A stretch of DNA of 64,000 bases, taken from positions 1 through 64,000 of the IMG/VR virus record IMGVR_UViG_3300049048_000052. The stretch is one strand, 5' to 3'. The notes beneath the pieces are model-generated. The model was given only the letters and a program-made list of their open reading frames with translations. It was not told the DNA's origin and ran no database searches. A program made the position numbers and the translations under genes. Positions 12,118-27,786 of the stretch are shown one piece after another. The stretch's first letter is position 1. Each line of letters opens with the position of its first letter.

Positions 12118-12693
12118 ATGATTCCATTAAATATAGGTAGAGACTCTAGAGGCTTACCAACATACCCTACTAGAGAGGGCACTAAACCAGAGGATAGGGC
12201 CAGAATAATAGAGGTTGTAAGACCTGACTTAGCTAGTTGCCTTGATATGGTTGGTATATCCAAGCAGGCTCATTGGAACGTTAAAGGTTATAACTTTATA
12301 GCAATACACAAACTATTTGATGAGATATATGACTATATTGCTGGCACCTCTGATGTATTGGCTGAGAGGATTACTGCATTAGGCGGTACTGCCCAAGGTG
12401 GTGCCCGTTTTGTGGTGGCTAATAGTTATATACCCATGTATCCCGATCAGGCTGTAGGATGCTGTGAACACCTAATGGCTATGGCGGATAGACTGGCTAT
12501 ACTCTCCAATACTATGGCCATGTCCATAGATAAACTAGATCAGATAGGATCAAAGGTTACTAGTAATATATATCAGGATATAGTCCATCAATTGGATAAG
12601 TATCTATGGTTCGTTGAGGCCCATATACAAGCTCCAGAACATAGTGAAGAAAGCTATGAATTGACTGATACTCTAAAATATGACCAGTCGTGA
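12118..12693 (+). CDS. dps: Dps / ferritin-like DNA protection protein
   Basis: KQAHWNVKGYNFIAIHKLFDEI...DVLAERITALGG and DKYLWFVEAH ferroxidase signatures. Confidence 0.93.
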   Translation: MIPLNIGRDSRGLPTYPTREGTKPEDRARIIEVVRPDLASCLDMVGISKQAHWNVKGYNFIAIHKLFDEIYDYIAGTSDVLAERITALGGTAQGGARFVVANSYIPMYPDQAVGCCEHLMAMADRLAILSNTMAMSIDKLDQIGSKVTSNIYQDIVHQLDKYLWFVEAHIQAPEHSEESYELTDTLKYDQS

Positions 12694-12902
12694 ATAAGTC
12701 ACATTCAAGGAAGACATATCCAGCTAATAAAGCTGTACCAGTCGAGGAACTAGAGAAGTATAGGAAAGAGATATTCCGTAGGGATGGGGATACATATATA
12801 AAAACATCTCCTACTCCTGAAATACGTAAATGGATTAAGAAGTTTCATATACGTAAGTCAAGGAGATATTATAGGTATGAAGAAGCCCAAGCTGAATATT
12901 AA
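12690..12902 (+). CDS. Small basic hypothetical protein
   Basis: ORF overlapping the dps stop by 4 nt. Confidence 0.55.
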   Translation: MNKSHSRKTYPANKAVPVEELEKYRKEIFRRDGDTYIKTSPTPEIRKWIKKFHIRKSRRYYRYEEAQAEY

Positions 12903-12910
12903 GAAGCTCT

Positions 12911-13558
12911 ATGATTGAACTTAGTTGTTGTATATGTGGGGCAGCTTATAAAGTTAAACCATACAGAGCTAATAACTCAAAGACCTGTTCCAAGATATGT
13001 AGAGATAAATACCTAGGGCTTATATTTAAGGGTTCTGGTGGGCCCTCCTGGAAGGGAGGTAGTTCTAATCGAACTAAAGAGCATAAACGTTGGTCTGCTG
13101 CAGTAATAGAAAGGGACGGCCGCTGTATAGAATGTGGTGCTAATTCCTTATTACAGGCGCATCATGTAGAACATTTCTCTAAATCTATATCGGCTAGAAC
13201 CGATATTAATAATGGCATAACTGTTTGTGTGAGGTGCCACGCTGATAAACACCCCGAATTACCTCGTGCCTTTGTGTTAAGGGAGGGTGGTAAGTCTATC
13301 AAACTATGCCCTCGGTGTGGAAAGCAGTTTGTAGGTGCAAAGGCTAAACAAGTGTATTGCAGTATCAATTGTAGAAGGGAATCTACAAAGACTGGCCATC
13401 TTATAAGATGTGTTATATGTAATAAAGAAGTCTATAAACAAGCTAGGCACAAAGACTTAGGCAAATGTTGCTCTAGAGTCTGTGCTGGGCAATTAGGTAG
13501 GCTTATCAGATATGGCAAGGAAAAAGAAGGAACTGAACATATCCAAAGCGATCCGTAG
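12911..13558 (+). CDS. HNH endonuclease with CxxC zinc-binding repeats
   Basis: RDGRCIECG..LQAHHVEH..DINNGITVCVRCHADKH, flanked by C..C..CS..C repeats. Confidence 0.85.
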   Translation: MIELSCCICGAAYKVKPYRANNSKTCSKICRDKYLGLIFKGSGGPSWKGGSSNRTKEHKRWSAAVIERDGRCIECGANSLLQAHHVEHFSKSISARTDINNGITVCVRCHADKHPELPRAFVLREGGKSIKLCPRCGKQFVGAKAKQVYCSINCRRESTKTGHLIRCVICNKEVYKQARHKDLGKCCSRVCAGQLGRLIRYGKEKEGTEHIQSDP

Positions 13559-13722: not shown

Positions 13723-14136
13723 ATGTATACCTTAGAAGAGTTTTTACTGTTAGATATAGTCAATAGGATAGAGTTGGCTAAGGTTATTAATATAGAGATA
13801 TTGGCTGATGATAAAAGCGAATTATATCTAACCTGGCAAGATAAGCAAGGTAAGGTATATAAGCATGCGATCAAAACTAAGATACTTGGTAATATCGTAC
13901 ATACCTTTGAGACATATGTAGCCACAGAGATGTTAAGACAGGGATATGTTCTAGTACCTATAGAGGGAGGCTTTGAGGTCTATGGAGGTACTGAGATATA
14001 TCAGGTTATGAAAGAAGAATGCACTTGCCCCTATTACATCTACAAGAGGAACAAGTGCATTCACTTGATATTTAAGGATTGGCATATGCAGTATAGACAG
14101 GAGGCCTCTGCATTAAAGAGGAAGTATCACGGCTAA
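13723..14136 (+). CDS. SWIM zinc-finger protein
   Basis: CTCPYYIYKRNKCIHL (CxC-x(n)-CxH). Confidence 0.7.
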   Translation: MYTLEEFLLLDIVNRIELAKVINIEILADDKSELYLTWQDKQGKVYKHAIKTKILGNIVHTFETYVATEMLRQGYVLVPIEGGFEVYGGTEIYQVMKEECTCPYYIYKRNKCIHLIFKDWHMQYRQEASALKRKYHG

Positions 14137-15629
14137 GCAGTCTCTTTAGACTTAGTAGGCCTGGACTTAGACTTAGCTTTAGGGGCAGCACTAACTGGCT
14201 TAGCCGTAGCCGCCTCTTTGATCTTTTTAATATTGGCCTTATCTGCAGCTGTCATTTCCCTTTGAGGTGCAGAGATGATATCTCTATAGTATTGATAATC
14301 TACTTCCTCTTCTAGGTTGAGGCCACCAACTGCTTCTGCTTGGGTTAACACACCTGAGATAGTGGCGACATCAGAGTATCTAAAGGGCTTAGCCGTTATA
14401 GTACCTGAGTCATAAGCTGAGAAGTTATCTCTAGCATCAAAGTTATACTGAATAAGTTGAGCTACGCACTGCTCTAGGAATGAATTGATAACTACCTCAA
14501 AGATAGAGTCAACAAACATATGGAACAGTTCTACTTGTCTTTCAGAGGCGCCCCCAGTACCTAGTCCTTGACTACCATCCTTCATAATGAGGTTGGGTAT
14601 GCTCATACCTCTCATCATATTCTCATCGCACAACTCAATAGCCTGTTGGAATGAGTCAGCGAAGTTATTACCAGTGGTAAGTGCTTCTAGTTTAACCGGG
14701 TGGTCCTTATCTATCTGAGTGAATACAATACCTGTCTCACTCCTCATGTTCTCTAGCTCACGGGCGGCCATCTCGTGTAGAGTGAGATACCTAGTGGTAC
14801 CGTCTAGGTCCTGCATTATCTCATCTGTATTCTGAGGAGGTACTACAGCCCATATAAGAGGCGTACCATATCTATCTAGTGCTATGGCCATCATATCTCT
14901 GAAGGCCTCCTTGAATAGATGATACTTAAGGATGGGAACAAGCACAGAGGTACCGTAAGGGTTATTACCCTCACCACCCAATGAGCAATGGATAACTTTA
15001 GACTTGGGTAGTCTAACCATAGAACCTGTAAAGTTAGGACCTACAGGCCTCTCCTTTGTATAGTAAAGAGGCACAGGTACCCACACACCAGTCAAGTAAT
15101 TGGATGTAGGGATAGCCTCGCCATGGGTTAACCTACCATGTAGATTAAGTTTAAGATCTACTTGACTAGGATGATAACTAATAACGTCCTCTATCCATGT
15201 TTGGTCTATACCATTAGGTCCCTTCTTCTTACCCCATATAATCTCTTGTGTAGAGAAGCCTGACCAGAGACAGTTAACTGTGGCATCATATATCCACTTA
15301 CTAACTCCCTTTAGATTAGCCTGTACAAACTTAGTTATATTCTTATCTGTATGAGAATACTTACCGATCTTAGCTTTAACGGATAGGGCTATCTTACGTA
15401 TCCCATCAAAGATGATAGGCTCGCTGCGTCTAGCATTATCCCAAGCTGCTAACTGATAATAGTGGGGTTTAACTACTGGAGTGAAATATTCACCAGTAGA
15501 GTTATATGCTGTAGCACGTCCCATCTGTCCGAACTCTGCAGGCCTTTTTCTATAGAGGGCTGAGGTTCTTATTGGAGGGGACGTGCTAATGTCTGATGTC
15601 TTTCCCAGGGTTGGGTGTAGGTCTACCAT
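14133..15629 (-). CDS. Portal protein (Mu gp29 / DUF935-like)
   Basis: LPKSKVIH..NPYGTSVL..KYHLFK..MAIALDRYGTP portal signature. Confidence 0.85.
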   Translation of the reverse strand: MVDLHPTLGKTSDISTSPPIRTSALYRKRPAEFGQMGRATAYNSTGEYFTPVVKPHYYQLAAWDNARRSEPIIFDGIRKIALSVKAKIGKYSHTDKNITKFVQANLKGVSKWIYDATVNCLWSGFSTQEIIWGKKKGPNGIDQTWIEDVISYHPSQVDLKLNLHGRLTHGEAIPTSNYLTGVWVPVPLYYTKERPVGPNFTGSMVRLPKSKVIHCSLGGEGNNPYGTSVLVPILKYHLFKEAFRDMMAIALDRYGTPLIWAVVPPQNTDEIMQDLDGTTRYLTLHEMAARELENMRSETGIVFTQIDKDHPVKLEALTTGNNFADSFQQAIELCDENMMRGMSIPNLIMKDGSQGLGTGGASERQVELFHMFVDSIFEVVINSFLEQCVAQLIQYNFDARDNFSAYDSGTITAKPFRYSDVATISGVLTQAEAVGGLNLEEEVDYQYYRDIISAPQREMTAADKANIKKIKEAATAKPVSAAPKAKSKSRPTKSKETA

Positions 15630-16632: not shown

Positions 16633-19600
16633 TTGTTTTCTGAAGAAGAAGAGAAGCGATCTAGTTTAGAGTTATTGATGGGTAGGCTTAGAGGGGAGGA
16701 ATCATCTGATGATGCCCTAAGTCTAGCGGTAAGGCACCACATCTATTATGGAGGTGGTAGTGATAGCTTCATGGCTAGATACAATAGAATGGCGGATGAG
16801 AACCCCTCAGATGAGCCTAGACTCTTTGGAGATCTAAGCACACTTAGCGGTGAATTTGAACTAGATGAGAACTCTCTGAATCAGAGTATAAGAGAAGTAA
16901 CAGCGTACTCTGCATTCTCATCCTTTGATAAGGATATGCAGAATGTATTAGGTAATGGTGCTAATGCTTTAAAGAGATTACATGGTAGGTTCTACTTTGG
17001 TAGTAAGACCCAGGATGCCACCTTTGCATCTAAGAATGTCTACGACACGATATATCGTCCATTCTCTATAGATGCAGATAAAGAAGGATGGACTATAGCC
17101 CCTGAGAGTCCCTTGCATGGTATGCGGGAACATGTCCTCCAAACTATAGTTGATGCTGATGTTAATAGCGGTAGGGGTAACTTCGTTAATATAAGAAGTG
17201 AACTCAATCGTATGGTCCGGGGTAATCTATCTATTAATAAGAAGAACCTGGCACTTATAGATAAAAATACAGACGAAAGAATAGCAGGTATGATAGGTCA
17301 AAAGACCTATGTTAATAGACCCGGCATAGCGCCCTTCTTATCTATGATTCAGGGTGCTGATACTGAGATTGTTATAGATACTTACCAGTTCCAGAATAAA
17401 GCTATATCAGACTATTTATATAACTGGGTAACTAGAAAGGCCTTAGCAGGTGAGACCCCTAGACTGACGATCAGATTAGCTATGCCTAGGGATAAAGGTG
17501 TTGATAGCGCTACTAGCTATGACATTCTTGGACCTAACCTAATACAAATACTCAAGTTCAAACAATTAAAAGAGCAGTTAAATAATGACTTCCCTGATAG
17601 GGATTGGGATGACCTTATTAAGGTAGAGGTTGAGTCTGATGTACACCACTCTAAAATGTACTTCACTGATAGGGCTGCAGCTATAGGCTCCATCAACCTT
17701 ACTAGTCCTGTAGGATATAATCCTAATCAGGCAGGCTCCAACTATGAAATGATGAGAATATTTCATAGTGTAGCCCCTCAAGCTAGTATGGGGGACCTTA
17801 GGTCTGCTCTTACGGATCTTAAGATAAGACATACCTTAGGACTTAATAAGGAACAGTTAAGAGAAGAGTTCCTTTATAGACAGGTAAAAGATCTTAGGGA
17901 GCAAATGGAGAACCGTGTGAGAGGTTCCTCTATGAACTTCACTAATAGGAGAGGCCAACTAGGAATGGGTGGCGACATCTTTGAGCATCTAGAGAAGACA
18001 GTAGAGATGCTGGATGATCCTAGATTTATTGGTAGTAGATTAGGAGACATAATAGCAGGGGGCACTAAGTCTGATAAGTCTAGGGCTCGGTTTGCTAATA
18101 GGTCTGGTAGACTTGAACTCCATATGATACTAGACCAAGTAATGCTATTGCAGCATGCGGATGGTCTATTCAACACTATGGTGGAAGGTGAATTTGGTAG
18201 GTTCTCAGATGATCAGCTATCTAGGATGGATAGTACTGGAGCTAGGAGGGCAAGATATAAGAGGGTACAAAGTAAAGTATTACGTGCCCTTGCTGATAAT
18301 AGAGCGTTTATTGTAGCTGATGCTAGAAATCTAAGAGAGGGTGTTATAGATCCTCTTATGTTTGGTGCCTATGATGAGAGAACTGGTACTAATAGAGGAC
18401 CCCTAATAGCTAGAGAGGTATGGGAGCAGCACGACTATGACATAGCTAAGCTAGCTAGGAAGGCTACAGGATCAAGTGTTGATGAGAGGGTGTTATCCCT
18501 TAGTAACCAGTTCGGATTCTCTAATGAGACTTCACTCCAAGTACTGGCATTGGCTAGTGGAAATATTAGGGCTGCAGGTGTTCCTAGACAGCACGTTAAA
18601 GCTTATAGCCTGATGGCTAGATTGGATGATAGGAAGGGGGCCCCTAATCTAGTAGCACTAAGCTCCTATATGGGTAGCTCCAACTTGGGTCTATATTCAT
18701 CCCCTATGAGGGGTATTGATGACCTAGGCTCCTCTATGGACTCTGATCATCTTAGCCATGAAATTGGTCTAACTATGATGATGGGTCAGGTTAGATCCAT
18801 GATGGACTTCAATACTACTAGTGAGTATGCACTCAGCAGTAGTCAAGAATATGTTGAGATGCAGAGGTACTTCCTACCTAATTGGAGCTTAGCTATGAGT
18901 CAATTAGGGGTGTCAGCTATAGAGAATAAGAACTTCATGGAGGTCCGTAGCAGGAGTCTATGGGAGGGTAACGTTGATAGTAAATCTCTAGTAGGACTGA
19001 GAGATGGCATCCATAATATGATGCGCTCTATGAAGATAGACGAATCTGTATACAGTATAGGTACTGTAACAGATGGATCTAGCCAAAAGGTTATAGGTCT
19101 AGAACTTAGTTTAGATGCTAGGGCCTTAGCTGGCTTTGGTAAAGGCTTTGAAGGTCTACATGGTGAGAGCCGTAGGATAAGTTATAGATTCACTACCCTT
19201 AAAGGGGCGGGTGCTGATCCTATGGTCTATGCAATAGATCAAGGTAAGATTATTGGCAGATCTTTATTTGTTAATAATAGTGATGTAGAACTACCTATTC
19301 TAGATAGGACTATACAAAGTAAGTCCAGTACAGTACTTAACTCTATAGATAATACTTTAGCCTTCATAGCTACCCTAGCTGCGGAGGTAACACATAGAGC
19401 GCTTATAGATAAACCTCGTAAGACATTTGAATCCTTAGATGGCAAGGCGCAGAGAGTAGCCATAGGAGATTACCTAGCTCGTCTTGCGGGTATTAGAGGC
19501 GGTCAATTAGAGGGTCTTTATAATACTGATGTCCTAACTGATGAACATGCTCTCAAGTTAGCGGAGGAGATTAATAAACGTCTGCTCTATGGTAATGAGA

Positions 19601-22600
19601 GTATGAAGCGTGCAGCAGCATTGGCTGGTATAGATTATTCTCAGCAGGCTAGAGCAAAAGATGTTAATACATTAGTTGCTAGTATACAAAGTCTAGCTAA
19701 GGAAGCTGAAGCTATTGCAGTACACAGGAAATTAGATAAGAGTGGATATCGTAGGGCACAGCTGATAGGTTCAGGTGGTACCTCAATCATAGATCAGATG
19801 ATGTCCATGATTACAGAGAAGGGATATGCTGATCTACTCTTAGACGTAGTTAGTCATACTAATGGTATGGACTATTACAGTTCTATGTCTGCTGATATAG
19901 AAAAGGTTAAGAAAATGCTTATGGAGCCTTTTCTTACTTTTGGTCAGCATAATATATATGGTTCCTCTCAGTCTTACTTTAGATTGGGAGTAAGGGGTGT
20001 GTCTAATGCACCTCAATATAGGGATGCTATAAGTATGGCTAGGGAGGGTAATCCTATGGCCGCCTATGCACTACCTTCCTTAGCACTAACTTATGGACCT
20101 ACTACCAATCTAAGGGCTAATGGGCTTATTAGAAGTATTGCTGATAAGTCATCTATTAACTTTGGAGTGGGAGAGGGCCTAAGCTTCTTTAACACTCCTA
20201 CTCAAGTCGTGGGTGATGTAACCAGTGCTGAGATATTATCGTTCCTCTCTGTAGGTAGTCTTGTAAGAAGAGAGGAAATAGAGAACTATATTAAGTCTGT
20301 AGATCCTAAGGCTAATACTCAGGCTCTACTTAGTAAGGCATTTGGGGATAGTCAGGAGATGTTCTCCTTCACCTTTGATACGGTTAAGAAGGTAGCACAG
20401 GTACCTCAGAGACTTAAGAATGCTGTAGGTGCTAGACCCTTATACGATATAAGTGAGAATGCTCAGAGGGTATTAGAAGATCCTATGAGTGGTGAGGCAG
20501 CTACCTTAGGTAGAGATTATGTATGGAAGCTAAGGGAAGAGCTAAAGCTTCACTTCCGTAGACAGATAAATATAGACCTTGTAACTGATGAGGTAACTAG
20601 AGCAGCCCTTGAGAGGGAGATGGAAAACAAGATAGATGCTCTAGTACAACCTGATATGGATATCGGGGCTTACTTTGGTGGTCAGATAAGAAGGATACTG
20701 TCTCAACCTTTAGCTGAACTCGTTAAGAGGGAGAGAGATGAGATAGAACAGCTCTTAGGTACTGAGGTTAATACTAGTACTATAGGATCTGAATTACTTA
20801 GAGTAAGAATGCTAAGGGCTGATATGTATGGCAGCTCTTATAGAGGTGTTATAGGAGGATCTAGAAGGCATGGTGCCCCAGTGGCCCTCGTACAGCTAAC
20901 AGGCGGTTACTCTGATTACTTCTATGCTAACCCCATGTTTGGGGGGTCCCAAGGTATGAGACAAGGTCTCTTAGAGAGAGCAGAGAAGAGAGTCAAGGCT
21001 TCTATGTTATCTACTGATTGGCAGGAGAAGACAGGTGTTCTTATTCAGCCTGGTTATACTATTAGACTAGATAAGAAGACTGGTACTGCATCAGTATTTG
21101 ATGAGAGGGGTAATTGGGTAAGGGCTATAGATAGCAGGGATCAGATGGATGCTATTGAGAAAGTAGTAGAGAATACTGATATTAATGGCTTACCCTCCTT
21201 TGCCAACGTACAGGCTACATCTAGTAACAGATTGGGTGAGGATAGTGTTGAACTAATATTAAGATTCGAACAACAGAGTCCTGCCTCTGTTGATAAATAT
21301 CAGATGAACTTCGAAGCCACCTATGTAAGAAGTATTAAACCTGGGGGTGGTCGAAGGGTTGAAGGTAACTGGGCCGGTGCGCTGGTTAAGGGCGTAGCTG
21401 TCTTTACTAGACATGATAATGAGTACTCCTTCTTTGGTGGAATACTGGATCAATTGAATCAAATGCCTACCACAACGTTTGGTGGTCAGTTGGACATAAG
21501 GAATGTATTCGGTCTACTTAGCCCTGCTAACCTTAAGTCCTTTGTTTATGGACATGGTGCTGAACTGCTAACTGATAACCGTAAGAGAACTGGCTTGCTT
21601 AATGCCTATAATGATGCTGCGGTTACCAGTGGGAGTGCTGAAGCTGAGAGAGTAAGTAAGAGATTAGCAGCTGCTATACTCTTAGGTTTTGGTACCTCTA
21701 TGATAGAGAGTAGTGCCGAGGCCAATGCTATTAAGCAGAATCTATATAGGGCCGCAGCTCAGGGGGAATTGGGTGAGTACTTCCAAGGTGTGGCAGCAGC
21801 TACGGGACTGCTAGAGTTTAAGGATGAACGTGGTCAGGTTATGGATGCGGCTAGTGTATTTACTAGTGAGGCGTCCTTCAAGGTTGCTCAGACACCTCTA
21901 CTAGCTGCCATTACATCTGAGGATATAATGCAGGCCATTAATGGATCTGGGGGTAGACTGTTTGATAAGTTAAGCACTGCTATTACTAATGCAGCTAAGG
22001 AGGCTGAGGGTACTGGCTATATGGTAGCTGGAGACTTCAGACATCAACAAGCAGGCATATTACTTACAGCGTTAGATATATTTGATCAGCTATCCGTACA
22101 GGTTGATAGGAAGAGAGGACGTAACCTTGTTACTCTGCCTACTGACTTTAATGTTAAGAATGCATCTGTTAGAGCTCAGCTAGCGGCTATAGTAGGTATG
22201 GGCCTTAATGATATGGAGGATGAGACTAAGGTAGAGAATATACTGGGTAGTATGCTTAGTAAGGCACCAGTGTTAAGACTATTCATGGATCTATCTTTCT
22301 CTCACTCTAAGGAACCTGTAAGTACTAAGATGACCGGTAAGCTTGAAATGCAGCACCTCATTAAGCCCCTACAGATGTTAGCGGGTGAGTTTGCTGATAA
22401 TAAGAGCTTGGATAAGATGAGGGTCACCATAGCCAACATGTTCGCTGCTATTAGCCACGGCTCTCTGTATCAATATGTAGCCGCAGGGGACTTACCTAGT
22501 AAGAATACAATTGTAGATATAACTGATCCCTTTGTCAGGACTCCAATGTTCAAACAGAGAATGTTGGGTATATATGGCACAGGGCTACATACGGATAAGT

Positions 22601-25600
22601 TCGAGCAGCTTAGGAAGGAGTACGGACAATATACTGAGGAACTACAAGTCCTCATAAGAGATAAGACAGTATCAGCTGATAGACATGAGGTCAAGGTCAT
22701 AATGACTAAGCTGGCTACTGTACAGGGTCAACTTTTAGAGCTGGCTAGATATTACCAACTGTTTGAGGATAAACCTGCCTCGGTTGGTATATCTAATGCA
22801 GTAGTAGGGGCCATGAATAATCCTAGATTTGGATTCTTTGTGCCCTACATGGAACCTATCATGTCTGAACATGGCGTCATCCTTAAGGTAGATAAGACTA
22901 GAGGTTTCTATAGCTTTATGCCATCTGGAGATGACATAAGACTAATGGGGGCCCAGTTTGGTAATTATATAGACCGTATAGTTCAAGCAACTATAGTGCT
23001 GCAATCAGGCTTTGCTCCTGGAGGACCCCTAGATGATATGTTTACTCGCATGTCTAAGATTAGGGGAAGTACCCATATAGCTATGAGTAATGAAGAATGG
23101 CAGCATCTGGATAGATTCTATAAGACAGCCCTTGAGATGCCTGCCCTATTAGCTGATGCTGCCTCAGGTACTAGGTTACAAAGAGCAACTGGTGCTGCCA
23201 TACCCTTTAGAGGTGGAGTGAGTACCCCTGCGGCCTCTGGTTTAGTACCTCCTGAAATGGTGGTGCTTGCTAGTGAGACATTAGCTAAACATGGCCTTAG
23301 AGTATCTGAGACTAAATGGAGAATGTTAGAGGATACTGATGCAGAGATGTCCAGAACTCATAGCACTCTCCAGAGTCTTGCTTATGAGTCTATGTCTCAG
23401 GCCGATAAGAACATAATAGAGAATAAGAGAAAGTTCCTAACAGGTCAGAGATTCGCATTAACTGAGGGTTTATCTGAACAGGGTACCAAGGGTCTACTAG
23501 ATAGGGCCCTAAAGGAAAGCCGTGAGCTAGCAGAAGACTATAGCAATGCGATGACCTTTACTGACCTGAAAGAAAGACAGAGACATCTAGGTAAGGTCTT
23601 TGGTAGGGCCGATCGTATGGCTAGACGTTTCAGCACTACTGTCTATGATCTGAATAAGAGAGGGGACTCCTTCGCTCAGCTGGCCGCCATCAGTGAGATG
23701 GAAATATGGAAGTCGCAGGCTAGAATATCTAGTCTAGAGGCACAGAACCAGGTAACTCCATTATCAAGTAAGGCTGCTGAAATACTAGATGCTGAAAGGA
23801 ATCAGCTCCGTATGTTTAAGGAGCTACCCTTCTATGTAACCAACTTTACCTTGGGTAGTGCTAACTCTGCCAGGAAAACTATGGAGGTTAGCCACCTAGC
23901 ACTTGAGGGTAAGCTAAGAGGTAATATTGTTAGAAGCATAATGTCTGCTGATATTACTAAGGAGATATTCGAGCTGGATGCAGATCACAGGACAGACTTC
24001 CTTGATTATAAGTTAACTACTCTAATAGATCATCTGGAGACTGCTAATGCTAAGAGGGATAATCCTGGTCCTCATGTGAAAGAAAGTGTTAGAGCTATGA
24101 GGAGTAGCCGTCTAGGAGGTGAGGCGGATTATAATAATCGTTTAGCTAGTAGGCTCGTAGATATTAGGGATAGGGTTAGAAGGGGTGGTACTAAGACGGC
24201 TGATGTCCTGGCTGAGATCAATGCTGCTTATGCTATGTATGACGTAAGTGGCGTATCATCTGCTATAGGCTTCCGTTCTCCTCCCTTTGGTTCTACTGAG
24301 CCCCAATTACAGATACTAGATGTCCTAAGGGATATAGCGGTAGTGAATGAGTATGCCCAAGGTATTGATGGGGGTAGTGGTAGATTAATCCAATACAGTG
24401 GGGCTGATGAGAGAAATGCATCATTGACCCTACTAAGTCCTATATCTATCCTAACTATGAACTTGGGTGACTTTGATGGTGACCCTTATACATTCATATT
24501 CTCTGAGCTACAAGGGTTAGAGCATAAGGTGATGGAGAAGAAGGATAATATTAAGATGCTCCAGTTTAGAAGGTCTAAGTGGAGTAAGGAACTATCACGC
24601 TTAGAACCAGATACCTTGGATTACGAAGATCTGAAGACTAGGGTTGATAATACTGAGAAACAGATCCTAAAGAATGAGGAGGAGATACCAAGGATCAGAT
24701 TAAAGATTAAGGAGATGGATGAACATCTACAAAGAGATATTATAGATAAGGGTGTGGCCCATAAACAGGTCGCGGCCTATATGGGTATCAATGCTAAATA
24801 CTTATTAACTGAGAGTCAGGGTGGTTATCTGGCTGACTCTGATAAATTAGATGCTAATGTCTTGTTCACCTTTATTGAACAGGGTAGAGGTTTGTATCCT
24901 GGTATAGATGATAAATATAAGAGTATCGATACACTCTACAAAGCCTTAGATCGACTCATAGAACCTACCTCCATGAGTGGGCCTATGAACCTTAATATGC
25001 ACCTATCTAGTATAGAAGCCCTAAAGAGTAGGGCCGCTGAGCTAGCTCAGGATATGAGTGATAACAGTGGTGGGGTATACGAACGTATTATCAATAACAA
25101 TGAGGTAGCTAGCGCGGTATTTGCGGAGTTACAGAACTTTGTTAATACTTATGAGGATTCAACCTCAGTTGAGATTGAGGACTACAAGTCAGGCTTAGCA
25201 GATCAGACTGTCAGCATGTACTATAAGATGCTTGGCACTAATGAGTTCCAGAAGATGATGAAGAGGGCTGGGGGAACTCAGATGGAGCTCTCCACGTATG
25301 ACATGCTAACAAAGGTCTTGGGTAAGGCGGGTGGTGATATCCTTGGTAAGACCTATAACTCTATAGTAGGTACTCTATTCGCTGATAGTCCTATGTTGGC
25401 AGTGGGTCATGTACTGACTAGGAGTGATGAGGTTAGCTCTGGGGTTGAGCAATATATAGATAATCTTATAAATACAGGTAAGTTAAGCGGAGATGAATGG
25501 TCTACCGGGGCCGACTTTATAGAGAATATAAAGACTAGTATGTCTAATGCAGAGCAGCTACAGGGATTCATGAAAGATATCCAGCAGCTACTCAGAGATA

Positions 25601-27786
25601 GTATTAAGTTAAAGGGTGGTACTAATATTCTTAGTGCTTTGAGAGATAAGGCTCAACAATATGAGGATCCCAACCTAGACGATGCAGGTAGAACAAGGGT
25701 TCTAAATGACATTGTTAAGGATATAGGTCCAGGACCTGGTCTCAAGTCATTAATGAGGCTTGATAGCTTTGTTAATAATATTAATGGTAGTATCTCTGAC
25801 TTTGAGTTAGCAGATGAGTTTGGAGTGTCCAAACTCGGGGATGAGTACGCATATATAACAGGAACTCTACAGGCAGCTGATCTTATTAATGAATCAGACC
25901 CCACTAAGGCTTATAGGACTAATAAAATGGTAGCCGCCTATAAGACTGTTAGAGATATCCAGCATATGGTTACTGCTTTTAACTTCGAGAGAGGTAGCAG
26001 TAGCAAGCAGTTCATGGATAACTTTATAAGGGTAGAGGAGAGAAGGGGCCAAAAGGATGTAATACTAGATAAGTTTAGAAATAGGAGTAATGCTGAGTTT
26101 GGTGAGTATAGTAGAGCATTAGCATCTTACAACGATGATGATCTTACTCCTAAGCCTAATGATAGCTATGATGATAGATTAACTGCTTTTGAGCAGAAGT
26201 ATGGAGAGTCTGGGCTGCTATTGTTCGCACATATGTATGAACAAAGCAAGGCTGGAACTAGAGGAGTCTTTGGAGAGTTCGGTCAGAACTTACTAGCCTT
26301 TGCACATAAGGATAGTATCAGGAAGACTCTAACTAATGTTATGGAAGGAAGATCAGAGACTATAGCAATGCCTGCCACTATGGATCAGGATATATTCACC
26401 TCTGATATAACCTTAACCCTAATGAACCTGGCCTCTACTAATAAGCTGGATCCTTCAGCCGCAGCCTTATTCTATCAGAGTATGGAAGGTCTCCTTAAGG
26501 TAGGGGGTATAGCATCAGATCCTAAAGATGTGTTGATGAATATCCTATCCTCTACCACTAGGAACAATAATGGTAATGAGGCTGCTACTAAAATAAGTGC
26601 TCAGATAGGGGCTCTTAATATGTTAGAACAAGAGGGCAGTGAGTTTAGACTTACCTTTAGTCAAGGTGGGCAGGAACATACTGCTATCTATAGCAGCCTC
26701 TTGGATTATCTACAGCAGTCCCTTACTGAAACAAGGGCAGGTCTAGAGAGTAAGATGATCCAAAGCTTCGTGAAGACTATTATTAATGATGGAGTATCTA
26801 GTGGTAGAAAGCCTAAGAATGCTAGAGAGTTCGCTACCTATATTCTTAAACCTAAGGGTTCGGATTCAGATACTGAGCCTGATGAGGCTATGATTACTAA
26901 GATAGTTGAGAATATAGAATCTATGTCCGAAGTAGATTCTATATTTAAGGAGAATGTTAGTACTAAACCTGTTCTAGAAGGCAAATATGCTGAGGTAGCC
27001 CGTAAGAGTATTAGTCGTATGGCTAGTGAGGATAAAGCCAATACTATGGACCTAATACTACCGGCATTCTTAAGTATTATGGGTCAAGCCATTGCTAGTG
27101 GATCTGTTGAACCTGAGGCTTTTCAAGATGTTGTTGGTTCTACGTTAGTGGCCGCAGCATACAGTAGACCTAACTTTGGTTCTAGGACTGCTACTGGTTT
27201 TATGGCTAATGTAGGTATAGGAAGTGCATTCAAATTCAGGATGGCAATTAATGAGGCGGGTGGGGATCCTGGTGAAGGCATAACCAGACTTATAGCTAGA
27301 GAACTAACCTTTAACGCAATAAGCGCTTGGGCTGCACCTAAGCTCACTAACCTAATGACTCAAAAGCTATTCGGAGCTAGACCTCAAACCCTAGATAGGG
27401 ATTACCATGAGGGTAGTAGGAACGTAGCAGGTATGATGAGTGGTGCAGTACTATCAGCCGCACTAGGAGTACTAGGAGGTAACGTAGCCTCTGGTGTTGT
27501 AGGAATGATGAGCACTGTACCTACTGCTAATCTAGTGGATACTGCGCTTGATTATATAGCAGTTAAAGCCAGAGCTATAGGAGCTCAAACGTTCCTAGAG
27601 GAATCTGATGCTATTAATATATTTAATGAGGAAGATGGAGAGTCTGTAGATGCAATATACTCAGATGAACCTATATCTTTCTATGGATCTAATCCTCAAT
27701 CCTTAGCAGAGGCTGTATATACGGATAACACTATGGATACTATTGTGGTGGAGCCCGTCAATTTGTTTGAGGATTATGATTCTTAG
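16633..27786 (+). CDS. Giant 3717-aa protein: tandem PLD domains plus two-barrel RNA polymerase centre (candidate virion RNAP)
   Basis: H339xK341xxxxD346..GSIN and H654xK656..GSSN PLD motifs; FRSPP about 65 aa before MNLGDFDGDP (D2613-D2617, nt 24469-24483); TTG start with GAGGGG SD. Confidence 0.75.
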   Translation: MFSEEEEKRSSLELLMGRLRGEESSDDALSLAVRHHIYYGGGSDSFMARYNRMADENPSDEPRLFGDLSTLSGEFELDENSLNQSIREVTAYSAFSSFDKDMQNVLGNGANALKRLHGRFYFGSKTQDATFASKNVYDTIYRPFSIDADKEGWTIAPESPLHGMREHVLQTIVDADVNSGRGNFVNIRSELNRMVRGNLSINKKNLALIDKNTDERIAGMIGQKTYVNRPGIAPFLSMIQGADTEIVIDTYQFQNKAISDYLYNWVTRKALAGETPRLTIRLAMPRDKGVDSATSYDILGPNLIQILKFKQLKEQLNNDFPDRDWDDLIKVEVESDVHHSKMYFTDRAAAIGSINLTSPVGYNPNQAGSNYEMMRIFHSVAPQASMGDLRSALTDLKIRHTLGLNKEQLREEFLYRQVKDLREQMENRVRGSSMNFTNRRGQLGMGGDIFEHLEKTVEMLDDPRFIGSRLGDIIAGGTKSDKSRARFANRSGRLELHMILDQVMLLQHADGLFNTMVEGEFGRFSDDQLSRMDSTGARRARYKRVQSKVLRALADNRAFIVADARNLREGVIDPLMFGAYDERTGTNRGPLIAREVWEQHDYDIAKLARKATGSSVDERVLSLSNQFGFSNETSLQVLALASGNIRAAGVPRQHVKAYSLMARLDDRKGAPNLVALSSYMGSSNLGLYSSPMRGIDDLGSSMDSDHLSHEIGLTMMMGQVRSMMDFNTTSEYALSSSQEYVEMQRYFLPNWSLAMSQLGVSAIENKNFMEVRSRSLWEGNVDSKSLVGLRDGIHNMMRSMKIDESVYSIGTVTDGSSQKVIGLELSLDARALAGFGKGFEGLHGESRRISYRFTTLKGAGADPMVYAIDQGKIIGRSLFVNNSDVELPILDRTIQSKSSTVLNSIDNTLAFIATLAAEVTHRALIDKPRKTFESLDGKAQRVAIGDYLARLAGIRGGQLEGLYNTDVLTDEHALKLAEEINKRLLYGNESMKRAAALAGIDYSQQARAKDVNTLVASIQSLAKEAEAIAVHRKLDKSGYRRAQLIGSGGTSIIDQMMSMITEKGYADLLLDVVSHTNGMDYYSSMSADIEKVKKMLMEPFLTFGQHNIYGSSQSYFRLGVRGVSNAPQYRDAISMAREGNPMAAYALPSLALTYGPTTNLRANGLIRSIADKSSINFGVGEGLSFFNTPTQVVGDVTSAEILSFLSVGSLVRREEIENYIKSVDPKANTQALLSKAFGDSQEMFSFTFDTVKKVAQVPQRLKNAVGARPLYDISENAQRVLEDPMSGEAATLGRDYVWKLREELKLHFRRQINIDLVTDEVTRAALEREMENKIDALVQPDMDIGAYFGGQIRRILSQPLAELVKRERDEIEQLLGTEVNTSTIGSELLRVRMLRADMYGSSYRGVIGGSRRHGAPVALVQLTGGYSDYFYANPMFGGSQGMRQGLLERAEKRVKASMLSTDWQEKTGVLIQPGYTIRLDKKTGTASVFDERGNWVRAIDSRDQMDAIEKVVENTDINGLPSFANVQATSSNRLGEDSVELILRFEQQSPASVDKYQMNFEATYVRSIKPGGGRRVEGNWAGALVKGVAVFTRHDNEYSFFGGILDQLNQMPTTTFGGQLDIRNVFGLLSPANLKSFVYGHGAELLTDNRKRTGLLNAYNDAAVTSGSAEAERVSKRLAAAILLGFGTSMIESSAEANAIKQNLYRAAAQGELGEYFQGVAAATGLLEFKDERGQVMDAASVFTSEASFKVAQTPLLAAITSEDIMQAINGSGGRLFDKLSTAITNAAKEAEGTGYMVAGDFRHQQAGILLTALDIFDQLSVQVDRKRGRNLVTLPTDFNVKNASVRAQLAAIVGMGLNDMEDETKVENILGSMLSKAPVLRLFMDLSFSHSKEPVSTKMTGKLEMQHLIKPLQMLAGEFADNKSLDKMRVTIANMFAAISHGSLYQYVAAGDLPSKNTIVDITDPFVRTPMFKQRMLGIYGTGLHTDKFEQLRKEYGQYTEELQVLIRDKTVSADRHEVKVIMTKLATVQGQLLELARYYQLFEDKPASVGISNAVVGAMNNPRFGFFVPYMEPIMSEHGVILKVDKTRGFYSFMPSGDDIRLMGAQFGNYIDRIVQATIVLQSGFAPGGPLDDMFTRMSKIRGSTHIAMSNEEWQHLDRFYKTALEMPALLADAASGTRLQRATGAAIPFRGGVSTPAASGLVPPEMVVLASETLAKHGLRVSETKWRMLEDTDAEMSRTHSTLQSLAYESMSQADKNIIENKRKFLTGQRFALTEGLSEQGTKGLLDRALKESRELAEDYSNAMTFTDLKERQRHLGKVFGRADRMARRFSTTVYDLNKRGDSFAQLAAISEMEIWKSQARISSLEAQNQVTPLSSKAAEILDAERNQLRMFKELPFYVTNFTLGSANSARKTMEVSHLALEGKLRGNIVRSIMSADITKEIFELDADHRTDFLDYKLTTLIDHLETANAKRDNPGPHVKESVRAMRSSRLGGEADYNNRLASRLVDIRDRVRRGGTKTADVLAEINAAYAMYDVSGVSSAIGFRSPPFGSTEPQLQILDVLRDIAVVNEYAQGIDGGSGRLIQYSGADERNASLTLLSPISILTMNLGDFDGDPYTFIFSELQGLEHKVMEKKDNIKMLQFRRSKWSKELSRLEPDTLDYEDLKTRVDNTEKQILKNEEEIPRIRLKIKEMDEHLQRDIIDKGVAHKQVAAYMGINAKYLLTESQGGYLADSDKLDANVLFTFIEQGRGLYPGIDDKYKSIDTLYKALDRLIEPTSMSGPMNLNMHLSSIEALKSRAAELAQDMSDNSGGVYERIINNNEVASAVFAELQNFVNTYEDSTSVEIEDYKSGLADQTVSMYYKMLGTNEFQKMMKRAGGTQMELSTYDMLTKVLGKAGGDILGKTYNSIVGTLFADSPMLAVGHVLTRSDEVSSGVEQYIDNLINTGKLSGDEWSTGADFIENIKTSMSNAEQLQGFMKDIQQLLRDSIKLKGGTNILSALRDKAQQYEDPNLDDAGRTRVLNDIVKDIGPGPGLKSLMRLDSFVNNINGSISDFELADEFGVSKLGDEYAYITGTLQAADLINESDPTKAYRTNKMVAAYKTVRDIQHMVTAFNFERGSSSKQFMDNFIRVEERRGQKDVILDKFRNRSNAEFGEYSRALASYNDDDLTPKPNDSYDDRLTAFEQKYGESGLLLFAHMYEQSKAGTRGVFGEFGQNLLAFAHKDSIRKTLTNVMEGRSETIAMPATMDQDIFTSDITLTLMNLASTNKLDPSAAALFYQSMEGLLKVGGIASDPKDVLMNILSSTTRNNNGNEAATKISAQIGALNMLEQEGSEFRLTFSQGGQEHTAIYSSLLDYLQQSLTETRAGLESKMIQSFVKTIINDGVSSGRKPKNAREFATYILKPKGSDSDTEPDEAMITKIVENIESMSEVDSIFKENVSTKPVLEGKYAEVARKSISRMASEDKANTMDLILPAFLSIMGQAIASGSVEPEAFQDVVGSTLVAAAYSRPNFGSRTATGFMANVGIGSAFKFRMAINEAGGDPGEGITRLIARELTFNAISAWAAPKLTNLMTQKLFGARPQTLDRDYHEGSRNVAGMMSGAVLSAALGVLGGNVASGVVGMMSTVPTANLVDTALDYIAVKARAIGAQTFLEESDAINIFNEEDGESVDAIYSDEPISFYGSNPQSLAEAVYTDNTMDTIVVEPVNLFEDYDS

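What the first reader, a model, noticed from the sequence alone, without database searches (positions are those of the whole stretch)
17350..18700. Tandem phospholipase-D (HKD) domains fused to the putative virion RNAP
Seen: HHSKMYFTD..GSINL and QHVKAY..GSSNL, the two halves needed for an intramolecular PLD active site. I do not know of a described PLD-RNAP fusion. Inference: a phospholipase for membrane passage during injection, a Nuc-type nuclease (host DNA degradation, or nicking to open the template), or an RNA-processing module.
Basis: partly seen in the sequence, partly recalled or inferred. Interest (0 to 1): 0.8.

Follow-up and report, generated by a model that had tools for sequence, protein, structure and literature searches.

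The report
PLD enzyme module in giant phage protein
A 3,717-residue protein of a 252-kb phage related to Microcystis phage Ma-LMM01 carries a real two-lobed, apparently active phospholipase-D-type phosphodiesterase near its N-terminus and, further on, the DFDGD signature of two-barrel RNA polymerases; this combination has not been described, and the enzyme's substrate (DNA or membrane lipid) is still open.

Summary
ORF 16633-27786 (+) has HxK...GSxN motifs at H339 and H654. In 61 giant homologues (3,300-6,500 aa, about 25-50% identical), H/K/N of both motifs and a Glu after each are invariant. AlphaFold2 gives a confident bilobed model (pLDDT 84, pTM 0.88). All 50 listed Foldseek PDB matches are PLD-superfamily proteins.

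The module occurs only in this giant-protein family. Cultured members are Ma-LMM01 gp080 and the MaMV phages, where the protein is annotated as hypothetical. UniProt labels gp080 'PLD phosphodiesterase domain-containing protein'.

The RNA polymerase part is plausible but unproven. GDFDGD and candidates for the other universal two-barrel residues are invariant, but no HMM or fold evidence was obtained.

'Virion' is inferred from the adjacent portal gene, from middle/late expression of gp080 in Ma-LMM01, and from C-terminal membrane-like segments.

The substrate is not settled. Weak sequence matches go only to DNA-acting PLDs: the poxvirus virion nicking-joining enzyme, PLD3/4 exonucleases, NucT, DrmC and DpdK. 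The fold matches go to lipid PLDs.

My best guess is a DNA nicking or resecting module that serves the polymerase. A membrane phospholipase is the main rival. I rate it a new variant of a known kind, with moderately high interest.

The parts
16633..27786 (+). Giant ORF of 3,717 aa, homologous to Ma-LMM01 gp080 (PHROG 31006). It carries the PLD module, the DFDGD region and C-terminal membrane-like segments.
   Evidence: Homology to 60 other giant proteins runs over aa 200-2250, 2550-3050 and 3450-3650.
17299..17787 (+). PLD N-lobe, aa 223-385.
   Evidence: AlphaFold2 strands and helices with pLDDT mostly 87-95. Pfam PLDc_2 matches aa 236-359 at E = 4e-4 when the piece is scanned alone; 20 of 32 homologues match, best 3e-9.
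17647..17697 (+). HKD motif 1: H339-S-K341-MYFT-D346-RAAAI-G-S-I-N355.
   Evidence: H339, K341 and N355 are invariant in 61 of 61 homologues. It aligns without gaps to the second HKD motif of the poxvirus virion nicking-joining enzyme and of PLD4.
17740..17748 (+). N370-Y-E372. E372 is the candidate acidic partner of the catalytic His of lobe 1.
   Evidence: E372 is 61/61, G368 is 61/61 and N370 is 55/61. The role is inferred from the PLD superfamily.
17788..18090 (+). Helical insertion between the two lobes, aa 386-486.
   Evidence: DSSP on the AlphaFold2 model shows helices at 197-298 of the 571-aa piece. This stretch is the least conserved part of the module.
18091..18819 (+). PLD C-lobe, aa 487-729.
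   Evidence: AlphaFold2 pLDDT is 88-97 over the core. Foldseek alignments to two-lobed PLDs span about 580-600 columns.
18592..18684 (+). HKD-like motif 2: H654-V-K656 ... G-S-S-N684. It has no Asp and a variable 15-35-residue insert.
   Evidence: H654, K656 and N684 are 61/61 and S682 is 59/61.
18760..18762 (+). E710, the candidate acidic partner of the catalytic His of lobe 2.
   Evidence: 61/61. hhalign of N-lobe against C-lobe places it opposite E372, but that alignment is not significant.
20914..20916 (+). D1428, in the context G-x-Y-S-D. Candidate for the Asp of the beta-like barrel.
   Evidence: 61/61. The assignment is by analogy with Rpb2 D837 as listed in PMC2919709. It is inferred.
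21355..21390 (+). R1575 ... L1584-x-K1586-G-V. Candidates for the two basic residues of the beta-like barrel.
   Evidence: R1575, L1584 and K1586 are 61/61. Inferred by analogy.
24274..24285 (+). R2548-S-P-P2551. Candidate for the R-x-P of the beta'-like barrel.
   Evidence: R2548 is 61/61 and P2551 is 56/61. The spacing is R-x-x-P rather than R-x-P.
24466..24483 (+). G2612-D-F-D-G-D2617, the metal-binding signature of two-barrel RNA polymerases.
   Evidence: D2613, D2615, G2616 and D2617 are 61/61. hhalign places it on NADFDGD of E. coli RpoC, but at E = 0.085.
27052..27108 (+). Hydrophobic, membrane-like segment, aa 3474-3492.
   Evidence: Kyte-Doolittle mean of 1.63 over 19 residues.
27424..27480 (+). 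Hydrophobic, Gly/Ala-rich membrane-like segment, aa 3598-3616.
   Evidence: Kyte-Doolittle mean of 1.65. It lies in a conserved block at 3450-3650.
14133..15629 (-). Portal gene, divergent neighbour of the giant gene (context only).
   Evidence: PHROG 113 portal, E = 9e-27. A portal gene sits in the same position in two other contigs that carry homologues.

Best explanation
Residues about 223-729 of the giant protein form one bilobed, catalytically intact PLD-superfamily phosphodiesterase. Each lobe supplies a His, a Lys, an Asn and a Glu to a single active site, which works through a covalent phospho-histidine intermediate.

The module is a fixed, ancient part of a family of giant phage proteins (Ma-LMM01 gp080-like). 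These proteins are probably packaged in the head and ejected into the host. They probably also contain a two-barrel RNA polymerase, with a beta-like part around aa 1400-1650 and a beta'-like part around aa 2540-2620.

My committed guess for the substrate is DNA. The module would nick, nick and rejoin, or resect the incoming phage genome next to the polymerase. That would give a sigma-less polymerase a single-stranded or relaxed template.

Shown: the motifs, their conservation, the fold, and the restriction of the module to this protein family. Inferred: catalytic activity, DNA as substrate, virion location and polymerase identity.
For: Motifs and invariance:
- H339, K341, N355, E372, H654, K656, N684 and E710 are conserved in 61 of 61 homologues that are otherwise about 25% identical.
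- This is the same level of conservation as the GDFDGD motif.

Fold:
- AlphaFold2 gives pLDDT 84 and pTM 0.88.
- All 50 listed Foldseek PDB matches are PLD-superfamily proteins, at probability 0.99-1.00 and E down to 1e-7.
- Pfam PLDc_2 matches 20 of 32 members.

Restriction to the family:
- Only 48 hits were found in 1.84 billion representative proteins. All are giant proteins or fragments of them.
- The N-lobe has no free-standing relatives.

Lean towards DNA:
- The only PDB sequence matches of the family profile are the poxvirus 'virion nicking-joining enzyme' (E = 0.0017) and the PLD4 and PLD3 5'-3' exonucleases. These align without gaps over a motif that shares the unusual D-x5-G spacing.
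- NCBIfam and PADLOC matches are only NucT, DpdK and DrmC. There are none to cardiolipin or phosphatidylserine synthase models.
- The crAss-like virion two-barrel polymerase gp66 transcribes single-stranded or denatured DNA but not double-stranded DNA, so a partner that opens DNA would be useful.
- From my own knowledge: the known hosts of the family are cyanobacteria, whose membranes are mostly glycolipid with little phospholipid.

Virion delivery:
- The portal gene is adjacent, and the same synteny holds in Ma-LMM01 and two other contigs.
- gp080 is expressed in the middle/late class with structural genes.
- There are C-terminal membrane-like segments.
- One homologue has ADP-ribosyltransferase domains inserted, as in packaged host-modifying enzymes.
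Against: - The matches to DNA-acting PLDs are weak (E = 1e-3 to 1e-1) and cover little more than the 24-29-residue HKD motif.
- The best structural matches are lipid-acting PLDs: Streptomyces PLD, human PLD1/2, phosphatidylserine synthase and vaccinia F13. Their TM-scores are only about 0.3, and bilobed lipid enzymes are favoured by a bilobed query.
- One weak N-lobe hit is annotated as cardiolipin synthase.
- The charge of the module is near neutral and gives no sign of DNA binding.
- The polymerase identity has no HMM or fold support.
- In Ma-LMM01, sigma-70-like promoters were reported for all gene classes, and the authors saw no need for a phage polymerase.
- There are no virion proteomics for this protein.
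Confidence: 0.4

Rival explanations
1. The module is a true phospholipase D. It refolds outside the cytoplasm when the N-terminal part of the giant protein leaves the tail. It then hydrolyses host phospholipid locally, producing phosphatidic acid that disturbs the bilayer. This helps the 410-kDa protein and the DNA cross the cytoplasmic membrane, in the way the N-terminal PLA2 of parvovirus VP1 or the N-terminal transglycosylase of T7 gp16 work.
For: - The top Foldseek matches are all bilobed lipid-acting PLDs.
- The module lies near the N-terminus of a protein that has C-terminal membrane-like segments.
- Strict conservation fits a core entry function.
- One weak N-lobe hit is annotated as cardiolipin synthase.
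Against: - No NCBIfam hit to Cls or Pss families, although NucT, DpdK and DrmC do hit.
- PDB sequence matches are only to nucleases.
- From my own knowledge: cyanobacterial membranes are poor in phospholipid.
- I know of no described phage ejection protein that is a phospholipase D, and the literature searches found none.
- TM-scores are only about 0.3.
Confidence: 0.3
2. The module is a general nuclease delivered with the genome. It degrades host DNA or RNA, or defence nucleic acids, as part of host take-over, and works independently of the polymerase part.
For: - It shows the same weak kinship to Nuc, NucT and the PLD3/4 nucleases.
- The family accepts extra host-modifying domains, such as the ADP-ribosyltransferases in P0013.
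Against: - Accessory take-over domains vary between relatives, whereas this module is present and catalytically intact in all 61 homologues at a fixed position.
- In Ma-LMM01 infection, host transcripts hardly change, which argues against early destruction of host DNA.
Confidence: 0.15
3. The module carries out another phosphoryl transfer. Options are removal of a protein-DNA or nucleotide adduct as Tdp1 does, handling of polyphosphate or nucleotides as the PLD-like domains of PPK1 do, or processing of RNA 5' ends.
For: - Motif 2 lacks the Asp, as the HKN motifs of Tdp1 do (my own knowledge).
- One member has a faint Tyr-DNA phosphodiesterase Pfam hit at E = 0.08.
- Atlas neighbours include clusters with PP_kinase_C.
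Against: All of these signals are at noise level, and no context supports them.
Confidence: 0.1
4. The module is a chance motif pair or a degenerate, non-catalytic PLD fold used only as scaffold.
For: - The window protein by itself scores below the Pfam gathering threshold (16-20.7 bits against 27).
- Motif 2 is atypical.
Against: - No shuffle out of 20,000 gave both motifs.
- All catalytic residues are invariant over 61 divergent homologues.
- The PLD fold is predicted with confidence.
Confidence: 0.03

Closest known systems
Poxvirus virion nicking-joining enzyme (vaccinia K4 type, PDB 30ie) and the mammalian PLD3/PLD4 5'-3' exonucleases
   Same: These are bilobed single-chain PLD enzymes that act on DNA. 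They are the best, and the only, PDB sequence matches of the family profile. The alignment is ungapped over the HKD motif and shares the D-x5-G spacing. From my own knowledge, the poxvirus enzyme is packaged in a virion that also carries a two-barrel RNA polymerase.
   Different: The similarity is limited to about 25 residues (E = 0.002-0.2). They are separate proteins of about 420-490 aa, not fused to a polymerase. They are not among the top 50 fold matches, although the vaccinia PLD-family protein F13 is.
Streptomyces PLD, human PLD1/PLD2 catalytic domains and phosphatidylserine synthase
   Same: They give the best structural matches: two lobes, one active site, and helical insertions.
   Different: Identity is 10-14% and TM-score about 0.3. 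There are no family-level HMM hits. Motif 2 here lacks the Asp and carries a long insert. The context is a phage giant protein.
Nuc / NucT, DISARM DrmC and DpdK (single-HKD, DNA-associated PLD proteins)
   Same: These are the only NCBIfam and PADLOC families hit by the module, in 6-8 of 32 members.
   Different: They are small proteins. From my own knowledge, Nuc forms its active site as a homodimer. Here two diverged lobes sit in one chain. E-values are only 1e-4 to 1e-2.
Giant virion RNA polymerases: crAss-like phi14:2 gp66, Thermus phage P23-45 gp96 (fused to the tape measure protein) and N4 vRNAP
   Same: They are very large phage proteins that are delivered into the host. For gp66 and gp96 the DFDxD/DFDGD motif is almost the only sequence signature. 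The gene lies among structural genes.
   Different: None of them is reported to have a PLD domain. N4 vRNAP is T7-like, not two-barrel. No detectable sequence similarity to any of them was found here. Polymerase activity and packaging are untested for this family.
Ma-LMM01 gp080 and its MaMV homologues (PHROG 31006)
   Same: This is the same protein family: 29% identity over the PLD module, the same synteny, and TM 0.74 to the BFVD model.
   Different: They are annotated only as 'hypothetical protein' in GenBank. UniProt's automatic name mentions the PLD domain. The phage papers state that these genomes encode no RNA polymerase.

Membership tests
PLD superfamily (HKD phosphodiesterases) | Two HxK...G(S/G)xN motifs per active site | tested here: met
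   H339/K341/N355 and H654/K656/N684 are present in the window and invariant in 61 of 61 homologues.
PLD superfamily (HKD phosphodiesterases) | Bilobed alpha/beta PLD fold | tested here: met
   AlphaFold2 gives pLDDT 84 and pTM 0.88. All 50 listed Foldseek PDB matches are PLD-superfamily proteins at probability 0.99-1.00, although TM-scores are about 0.3.
PLD superfamily (HKD phosphodiesterases) | Pfam PLDc/PLDc_2 model above the gathering score | tested here: inconclusive
   The window protein scores 16-20.7 bits against a cut-off of 27. 20 of 32 homologues match PLDc_2, best E = 3.2e-9, and several carry precomputed PF13091.
PLD superfamily (HKD phosphodiesterases) | Conserved Asp of the HKD motif in both halves | tested here: not met
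   Lobe 1 has D346, which is D or E in most homologues. Lobe 2 has no Asp at that position in any homologue. From my own knowledge, some accepted members such as Tdp1 also lack it, so this does not exclude membership.
PLD superfamily (HKD phosphodiesterases) | Phosphodiesterase activity through a phospho-histidine intermediate | not testable with these tools
   This needs biochemistry.
PLD-type nucleases (Nuc/NucT, PLD3/4, poxvirus K4) | Sequence kinship beyond the catalytic motif | tested here: inconclusive
   Only these families are hit, but at E = 1e-4 to 0.2 and over 24-29 residues for the PDB entries.
Lipid-acting PLDs (PLD1/2, Streptomyces PLD, Cls, Pss) | Family-level sequence model match | tested here: not met
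   There are no NCBIfam hits to Cls or Pss models at E <= 0.1 in 32 members. One remote hit is annotated as cardiolipin synthase at E = 8e-3. Fold similarity is present.
Two-barrel RNA polymerases | DxDGD metal-binding motif | tested here: met
   GDFDGD at 2612-2617 is invariant in 61 of 61.
Two-barrel RNA polymerases | The other five universally invariant residues (R-x-P in the beta' barrel; Asp plus two basic residues in the beta barrel; PMC2919709) | tested here: inconclusive
   Invariant candidates exist (R2548..P2551, D1428, R1575, K1586) in the right order and with plausible spacing. They were picked by eye from 123 conserved columns. The spacing is R-x-x-P, not R-x-P.
Two-barrel RNA polymerases | Two double-psi beta-barrel folds, or HMM similarity to known polymerases | tested here: inconclusive
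   The AlphaFold2 model of aa 2530-3070 has pLDDT below 50 around DFDGD, and its Foldseek result is meaningless. There are no Pfam or PDB HMM hits. hhalign against RpoC gives E = 0.085. An Atlas lead: 22 of the 100 nearest clusters carry PF05183 RdRP, at a score of 0.69.
N4-like (T7-type) virion RNA polymerase | T7-like single-subunit polymerase domain | tested here: not met
   There are no Pfam or PHROG hits to such domains. The only PHROG is 31006, of unknown function.
Virion-packaged, ejected proteins | Presence in purified particles | not testable with these tools
   Only context is available: the portal gene is adjacent, gp080 is middle/late class, and there are C-terminal hydrophobic segments.

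The most novel reading that the evidence does not exclude
The giant protein is a self-sufficient 'enter, open, transcribe' machine. Its C-terminus anchors it in the membrane and its two-barrel polymerase pulls in and transcribes the genome. The built-in PLD module acts as a covalent nicking-joining swivel or a strand-resecting nuclease. It supplies the single-stranded or relaxed template that sigma-less virion polymerases need. This would be a phage counterpart of the poxvirus core, where the RNA polymerase and the K4 nicking-joining enzyme are packaged together, and it would define a new family of virion RNA polymerases in cyanophages that are said to have none.
Probability: 0.2. Interest if true: 0.85.

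Novelty: new variant of a known kind. Interest (0 to 1): 0.62.

Why it matters
If the giant protein is a virion RNA polymerase, then the Ma-LMM01-like cyanophages, which infect bloom-forming Microcystis and are described as fully dependent on host transcription, bring their own enzyme. That would add another lineage of giant two-barrel virion polymerases beside those of the crAss-like phages and P23-45.

The strictly conserved PLD module would be the first enzymatic partner built into such a polymerase. It offers a testable answer to an open question: how do sigma-less virion polymerases, which prefer single-stranded DNA in vitro, gain access to a double-stranded genome during entry?

If the module is instead a lipase, it would be, as far as I know, the first phospholipase D shown in a phage ejection protein. 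Either result is new biology, and it is reachable with a cultured system (Ma-LMM01 or MaMV on Microcystis aeruginosa).

Tried and rejected
- **Single-sequence phmmer of aa 190-760 against PDB.** Only noise.
- **hhalign of the N-lobe profile against the C-lobe profile.** The HxK, GSxN and Glu positions line up, but E = 0.14. The internal duplication cannot be shown by sequence.
- **Natural splitting of the two lobes into separate genes.** Contigs L003 and L004 looked like this. Reading all three frames shows single frameshifts, with the homologous sequence continuing in another frame. L003 has 2.8x coverage. These are sequencing artefacts or pseudogenes, not real splits. A 1467 + 2186 aa split in the contig of P0038 could not be checked because no DNA was available.
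- **Free-standing relatives of the N-lobe.** None were found among 5.8 billion proteins or 1.84 billion representatives.
- **The polymerase by structure.** I cut aa 2530-3070, probably too short on the N-terminal side. The DFDGD region came out unfolded and the Foldseek result was noise.
- **The polymerase by profile.** PDB searches with three sub-alignments returned coiled-coil or random hits, Pfam found nothing, and hhalign against E. coli RpoB and RpoC was not significant.
- **A 'bridge helix'.** My eye matched aa 2897-2913 while hhalign preferred about aa 1440-1460. Neither is significant, so I make no claim.
- **Charge and pI of the module.** Uninformative.
- **Identity as tape measure protein.** Unlikely. 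The gene sits beside the portal gene, and a separate 1,613-aa ORF exists in the tail region.
Full report
**What is in the sequence.** Window 16633-27786 (+) is one uninterrupted ORF of 3,717 codons. It has a TTG start preceded by GAGGGG. JGI's gene caller made the same call on two nearly identical contigs of about 251.8 kb, and the window is the first 64 kb of that contig. 'HHSKMYFTD..GSINL' has H339 at nt 17647, and 'QHVKAY...GSSNL' has H654 at nt 18592. Motif 1 reads HxK(x)4D(x)5GSxN. Motif 2 reads HxK(x)25GSSN, with no Asp. In 20,000 shuffles of the protein, a strict motif 1 turns up in 0.015%, a loose motif 2 in 3.5%, and both together in none.

**Conservation.** The word-index search returned 37 giant proteins of 3,294-6,490 aa. 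The exhaustive HMMER scan of 1.84 billion representatives returned only 48 hits, and all of them are giant proteins or fragments of such proteins. The module always lies at about residues 150-870. In an alignment of 61 full-length homologues that are about 25% identical on average, H339, K341, N355, H654, K656 and N684 are invariant. So are E372 and E710, one Glu after each motif. That is the same level of conservation as the GDFDGD motif further down the protein. The N-lobe profile finds no free-standing relative among 5.8 billion proteins.

**Fold.** AlphaFold2 on aa 190-760 with 32 aligned homologues gave pLDDT 84 and pTM 0.88. The model has two alpha/beta lobes, about aa 223-385 and 487-729, separated by a helical insertion. 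All 50 listed Foldseek PDB matches are PLD-superfamily proteins: Streptomyces PLD (E = 1e-7), human PLD1 and PLD2, phosphatidylserine synthase and vaccinia F13. Their probability is 0.99-1.00, but TM-scores are only about 0.3. Against BFVD, the best match is the model of Ma-LMM01 gp080 (TM 0.74). UniProt names that protein 'PLD phosphodiesterase domain-containing protein'. Pfam PLDc_2 is below threshold for the window protein (16-20.7 bits against 27), but it matches 20 of 32 homologues, best at 3e-9. The language-model neighbours are all PLD families.

**The host protein and its genome.** The only phage records with relatives are Microcystis phages Ma-LMM01 (gp080, 3,562 aa, 'hypothetical protein') and the MaMV isolates, plus a 5'-truncated gene in Microcoleus phage My-WqHQDG. 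The neighbours in the window are a tail sheath gene, a major head protein gene and, directly upstream on the other strand, a portal gene. The portal sits in the same place in two other contigs that carry homologues. Homology among the giant proteins runs over aa 200-2250, 2550-3050 and 3450-3650, with variable linkers in between. The C-terminal part has two hydrophobic, Gly/Ala-rich segments. One homologue, P0013, has two ADP-ribosyltransferase domains inserted in the variable linker. That fits a protein delivered into the host. In the Ma-LMM01 infection transcriptome, gp080 belongs to the middle/late cluster along with its structural neighbours, and not to the early genes.

**Is it an RNA polymerase?** GDFDGD at 2612-2617 is invariant. 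A review of two-barrel polymerases lists eight universally invariant residues: R-x-P and DxDxD in one barrel, and an Asp plus two basic residues in the other. Invariant candidates exist here in the right order: D1428, R1575, K1586, and R2548..P2551. Everything else was negative or inconclusive:
- There were no Pfam hits.
- There were no PDB HMM hits with three sub-alignments.
- hhalign placed DFDGD on NADFDGD of E. coli RpoC only at E = 0.085.
- My AlphaFold2 piece, aa 2530-3070, left the DFDGD region unfolded, and its Foldseek search was noise.
- One weak lead: 22 of the 100 nearest Atlas clusters carry the QDE-1-type RdRP family, at a score of 0.69.

The same lack of detectable similarity was reported for the proven virion polymerases of phi14:2 and P23-45. 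I put the polymerase identity at roughly two in three. The phage literature says these genomes encode no RNA polymerase and found sigma-70-like promoters for all gene classes.

**What the PLD module does.** The catalytic residues are as conserved as the putative polymerase site, and the module never occurs on its own. It is therefore a core part of the protein's job rather than an accessory.

Sequence-level signals point only to DNA-acting PLDs:
- The family profile matches the poxvirus 'virion nicking-joining enzyme' (E = 0.0017-0.005), then the PLD4 and PLD3 5'-3' exonucleases. These align without gaps over a motif that shares the short D-x5-G spacing.
- NCBIfam and PADLOC give only NucT, DpdK and DrmC, and nothing for the cardiolipin or phosphatidylserine synthase models.

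These matches are weak and confined to the motif. Fold matches favour lipid-acting PLDs, but a bilobed query favours bilobed targets.

Biology adds two arguments for DNA. First, the crAss-like virion polymerase transcribes single-stranded but not double-stranded DNA, so a nicking or resecting partner would be useful. Second, from my own knowledge, the cyanobacterial hosts have little phospholipid.

I therefore commit to a DNA nicking, nicking-joining or resecting module working beside the polymerase, at confidence 0.4. The rivals are a membrane phospholipase used during ejection (0.3), a general host nuclease (0.15), another phosphoryl transfer (0.1), and a non-catalytic or chance motif pair (0.03).

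**Novelty.** No paper in the library describes a PLD domain in a virion polymerase or ejection protein. The PLD label on gp080 exists only as an automatic UniProt name. The PLD fold and chemistry are known. The architecture and the family are new. I rate the finding a new variant of a known kind.

Noticed in passing
P0013 (6,315 aa homologue), residues about 3640-3730 and 4100-4250: Two ADP-ribosyltransferase domains (PF01129 ART, PF03496 ADPrib_exo_Tox) are inserted in the variable linker between the beta-like and beta'-like parts. This suggests the family acts as a carrier for injected host-modifying enzymes.
   Followed up: partly
window 27052-27108 and 27424-27480 (aa 3474-3492 and 3598-3616): There are two hydrophobic, Gly/Ala-rich membrane-like segments in the conserved C-terminal block of the giant protein. 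They may serve as a membrane anchor after ejection.
   Followed up: partly
window about 24490-24750 (aa about 2620-2705): A long predicted coiled-coil hairpin follows directly after DFDGD (pLDDT 88-96). It dominated the profile searches with coiled-coil noise.
   Followed up: no
L004 5851-6090 and 11551-11680; L003 150-450: The homologous giant genes are called as 2-3 separate genes, with the PLD lobes apparently on different proteins. The homologous reading frame continues in a shifted frame, so these are frameshifts, not natural splits.
   Followed up: yes
contig of P0038 (JGI 3300040801, no DNA available): The giant gene is called as 1,467 aa plus 2,186 aa with a 135-bp gap. The break would fall between the candidate Asp and the candidate basic residues of the beta-like barrel. 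It could be a real split, an intron or an error.
   Followed up: no
window 12118-13558 (+): A DNA-binding protein gene and an HNH endonuclease gene lie on the opposite strand to the surrounding head genes, and local GC drops to 0.396. They look like a mobile insertion between the head genes and the portal gene.
   Followed up: no
window 41819-46660 (+): A second very large ORF of 1,613 aa (PHROG 30979, unknown function). It is a candidate tape measure or fibre protein, and a reason not to read the 3,717-aa protein as the tape measure.
   Followed up: no
window 17578-17832 (-) and 17874-18176 (-): ORFs of 84 and 100 aa lie antisense to the PLD region. Given the strong conservation of the + strand frame, they are most likely spurious.
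   Followed up: no
L006 (OR578706.1, Microcoleus phage My-WqHQDG) 1-7869: This partial genome record begins inside its copy of the giant gene (2,623 codons left). The presence of the PLD module in this second cultured host group could therefore not be checked.
   Followed up: partly
Ma-LMM01 literature (PMC5780444, PMC9927357): The papers state that these phages have no RNA polymerase and rely on host sigma-70-type promoters. The early genes sit in one 5.8-kb block (gp054-gp063), about 7-13 kb from gp080. It would be worth re-examining this if gp080 is a polymerase.
   Followed up: no
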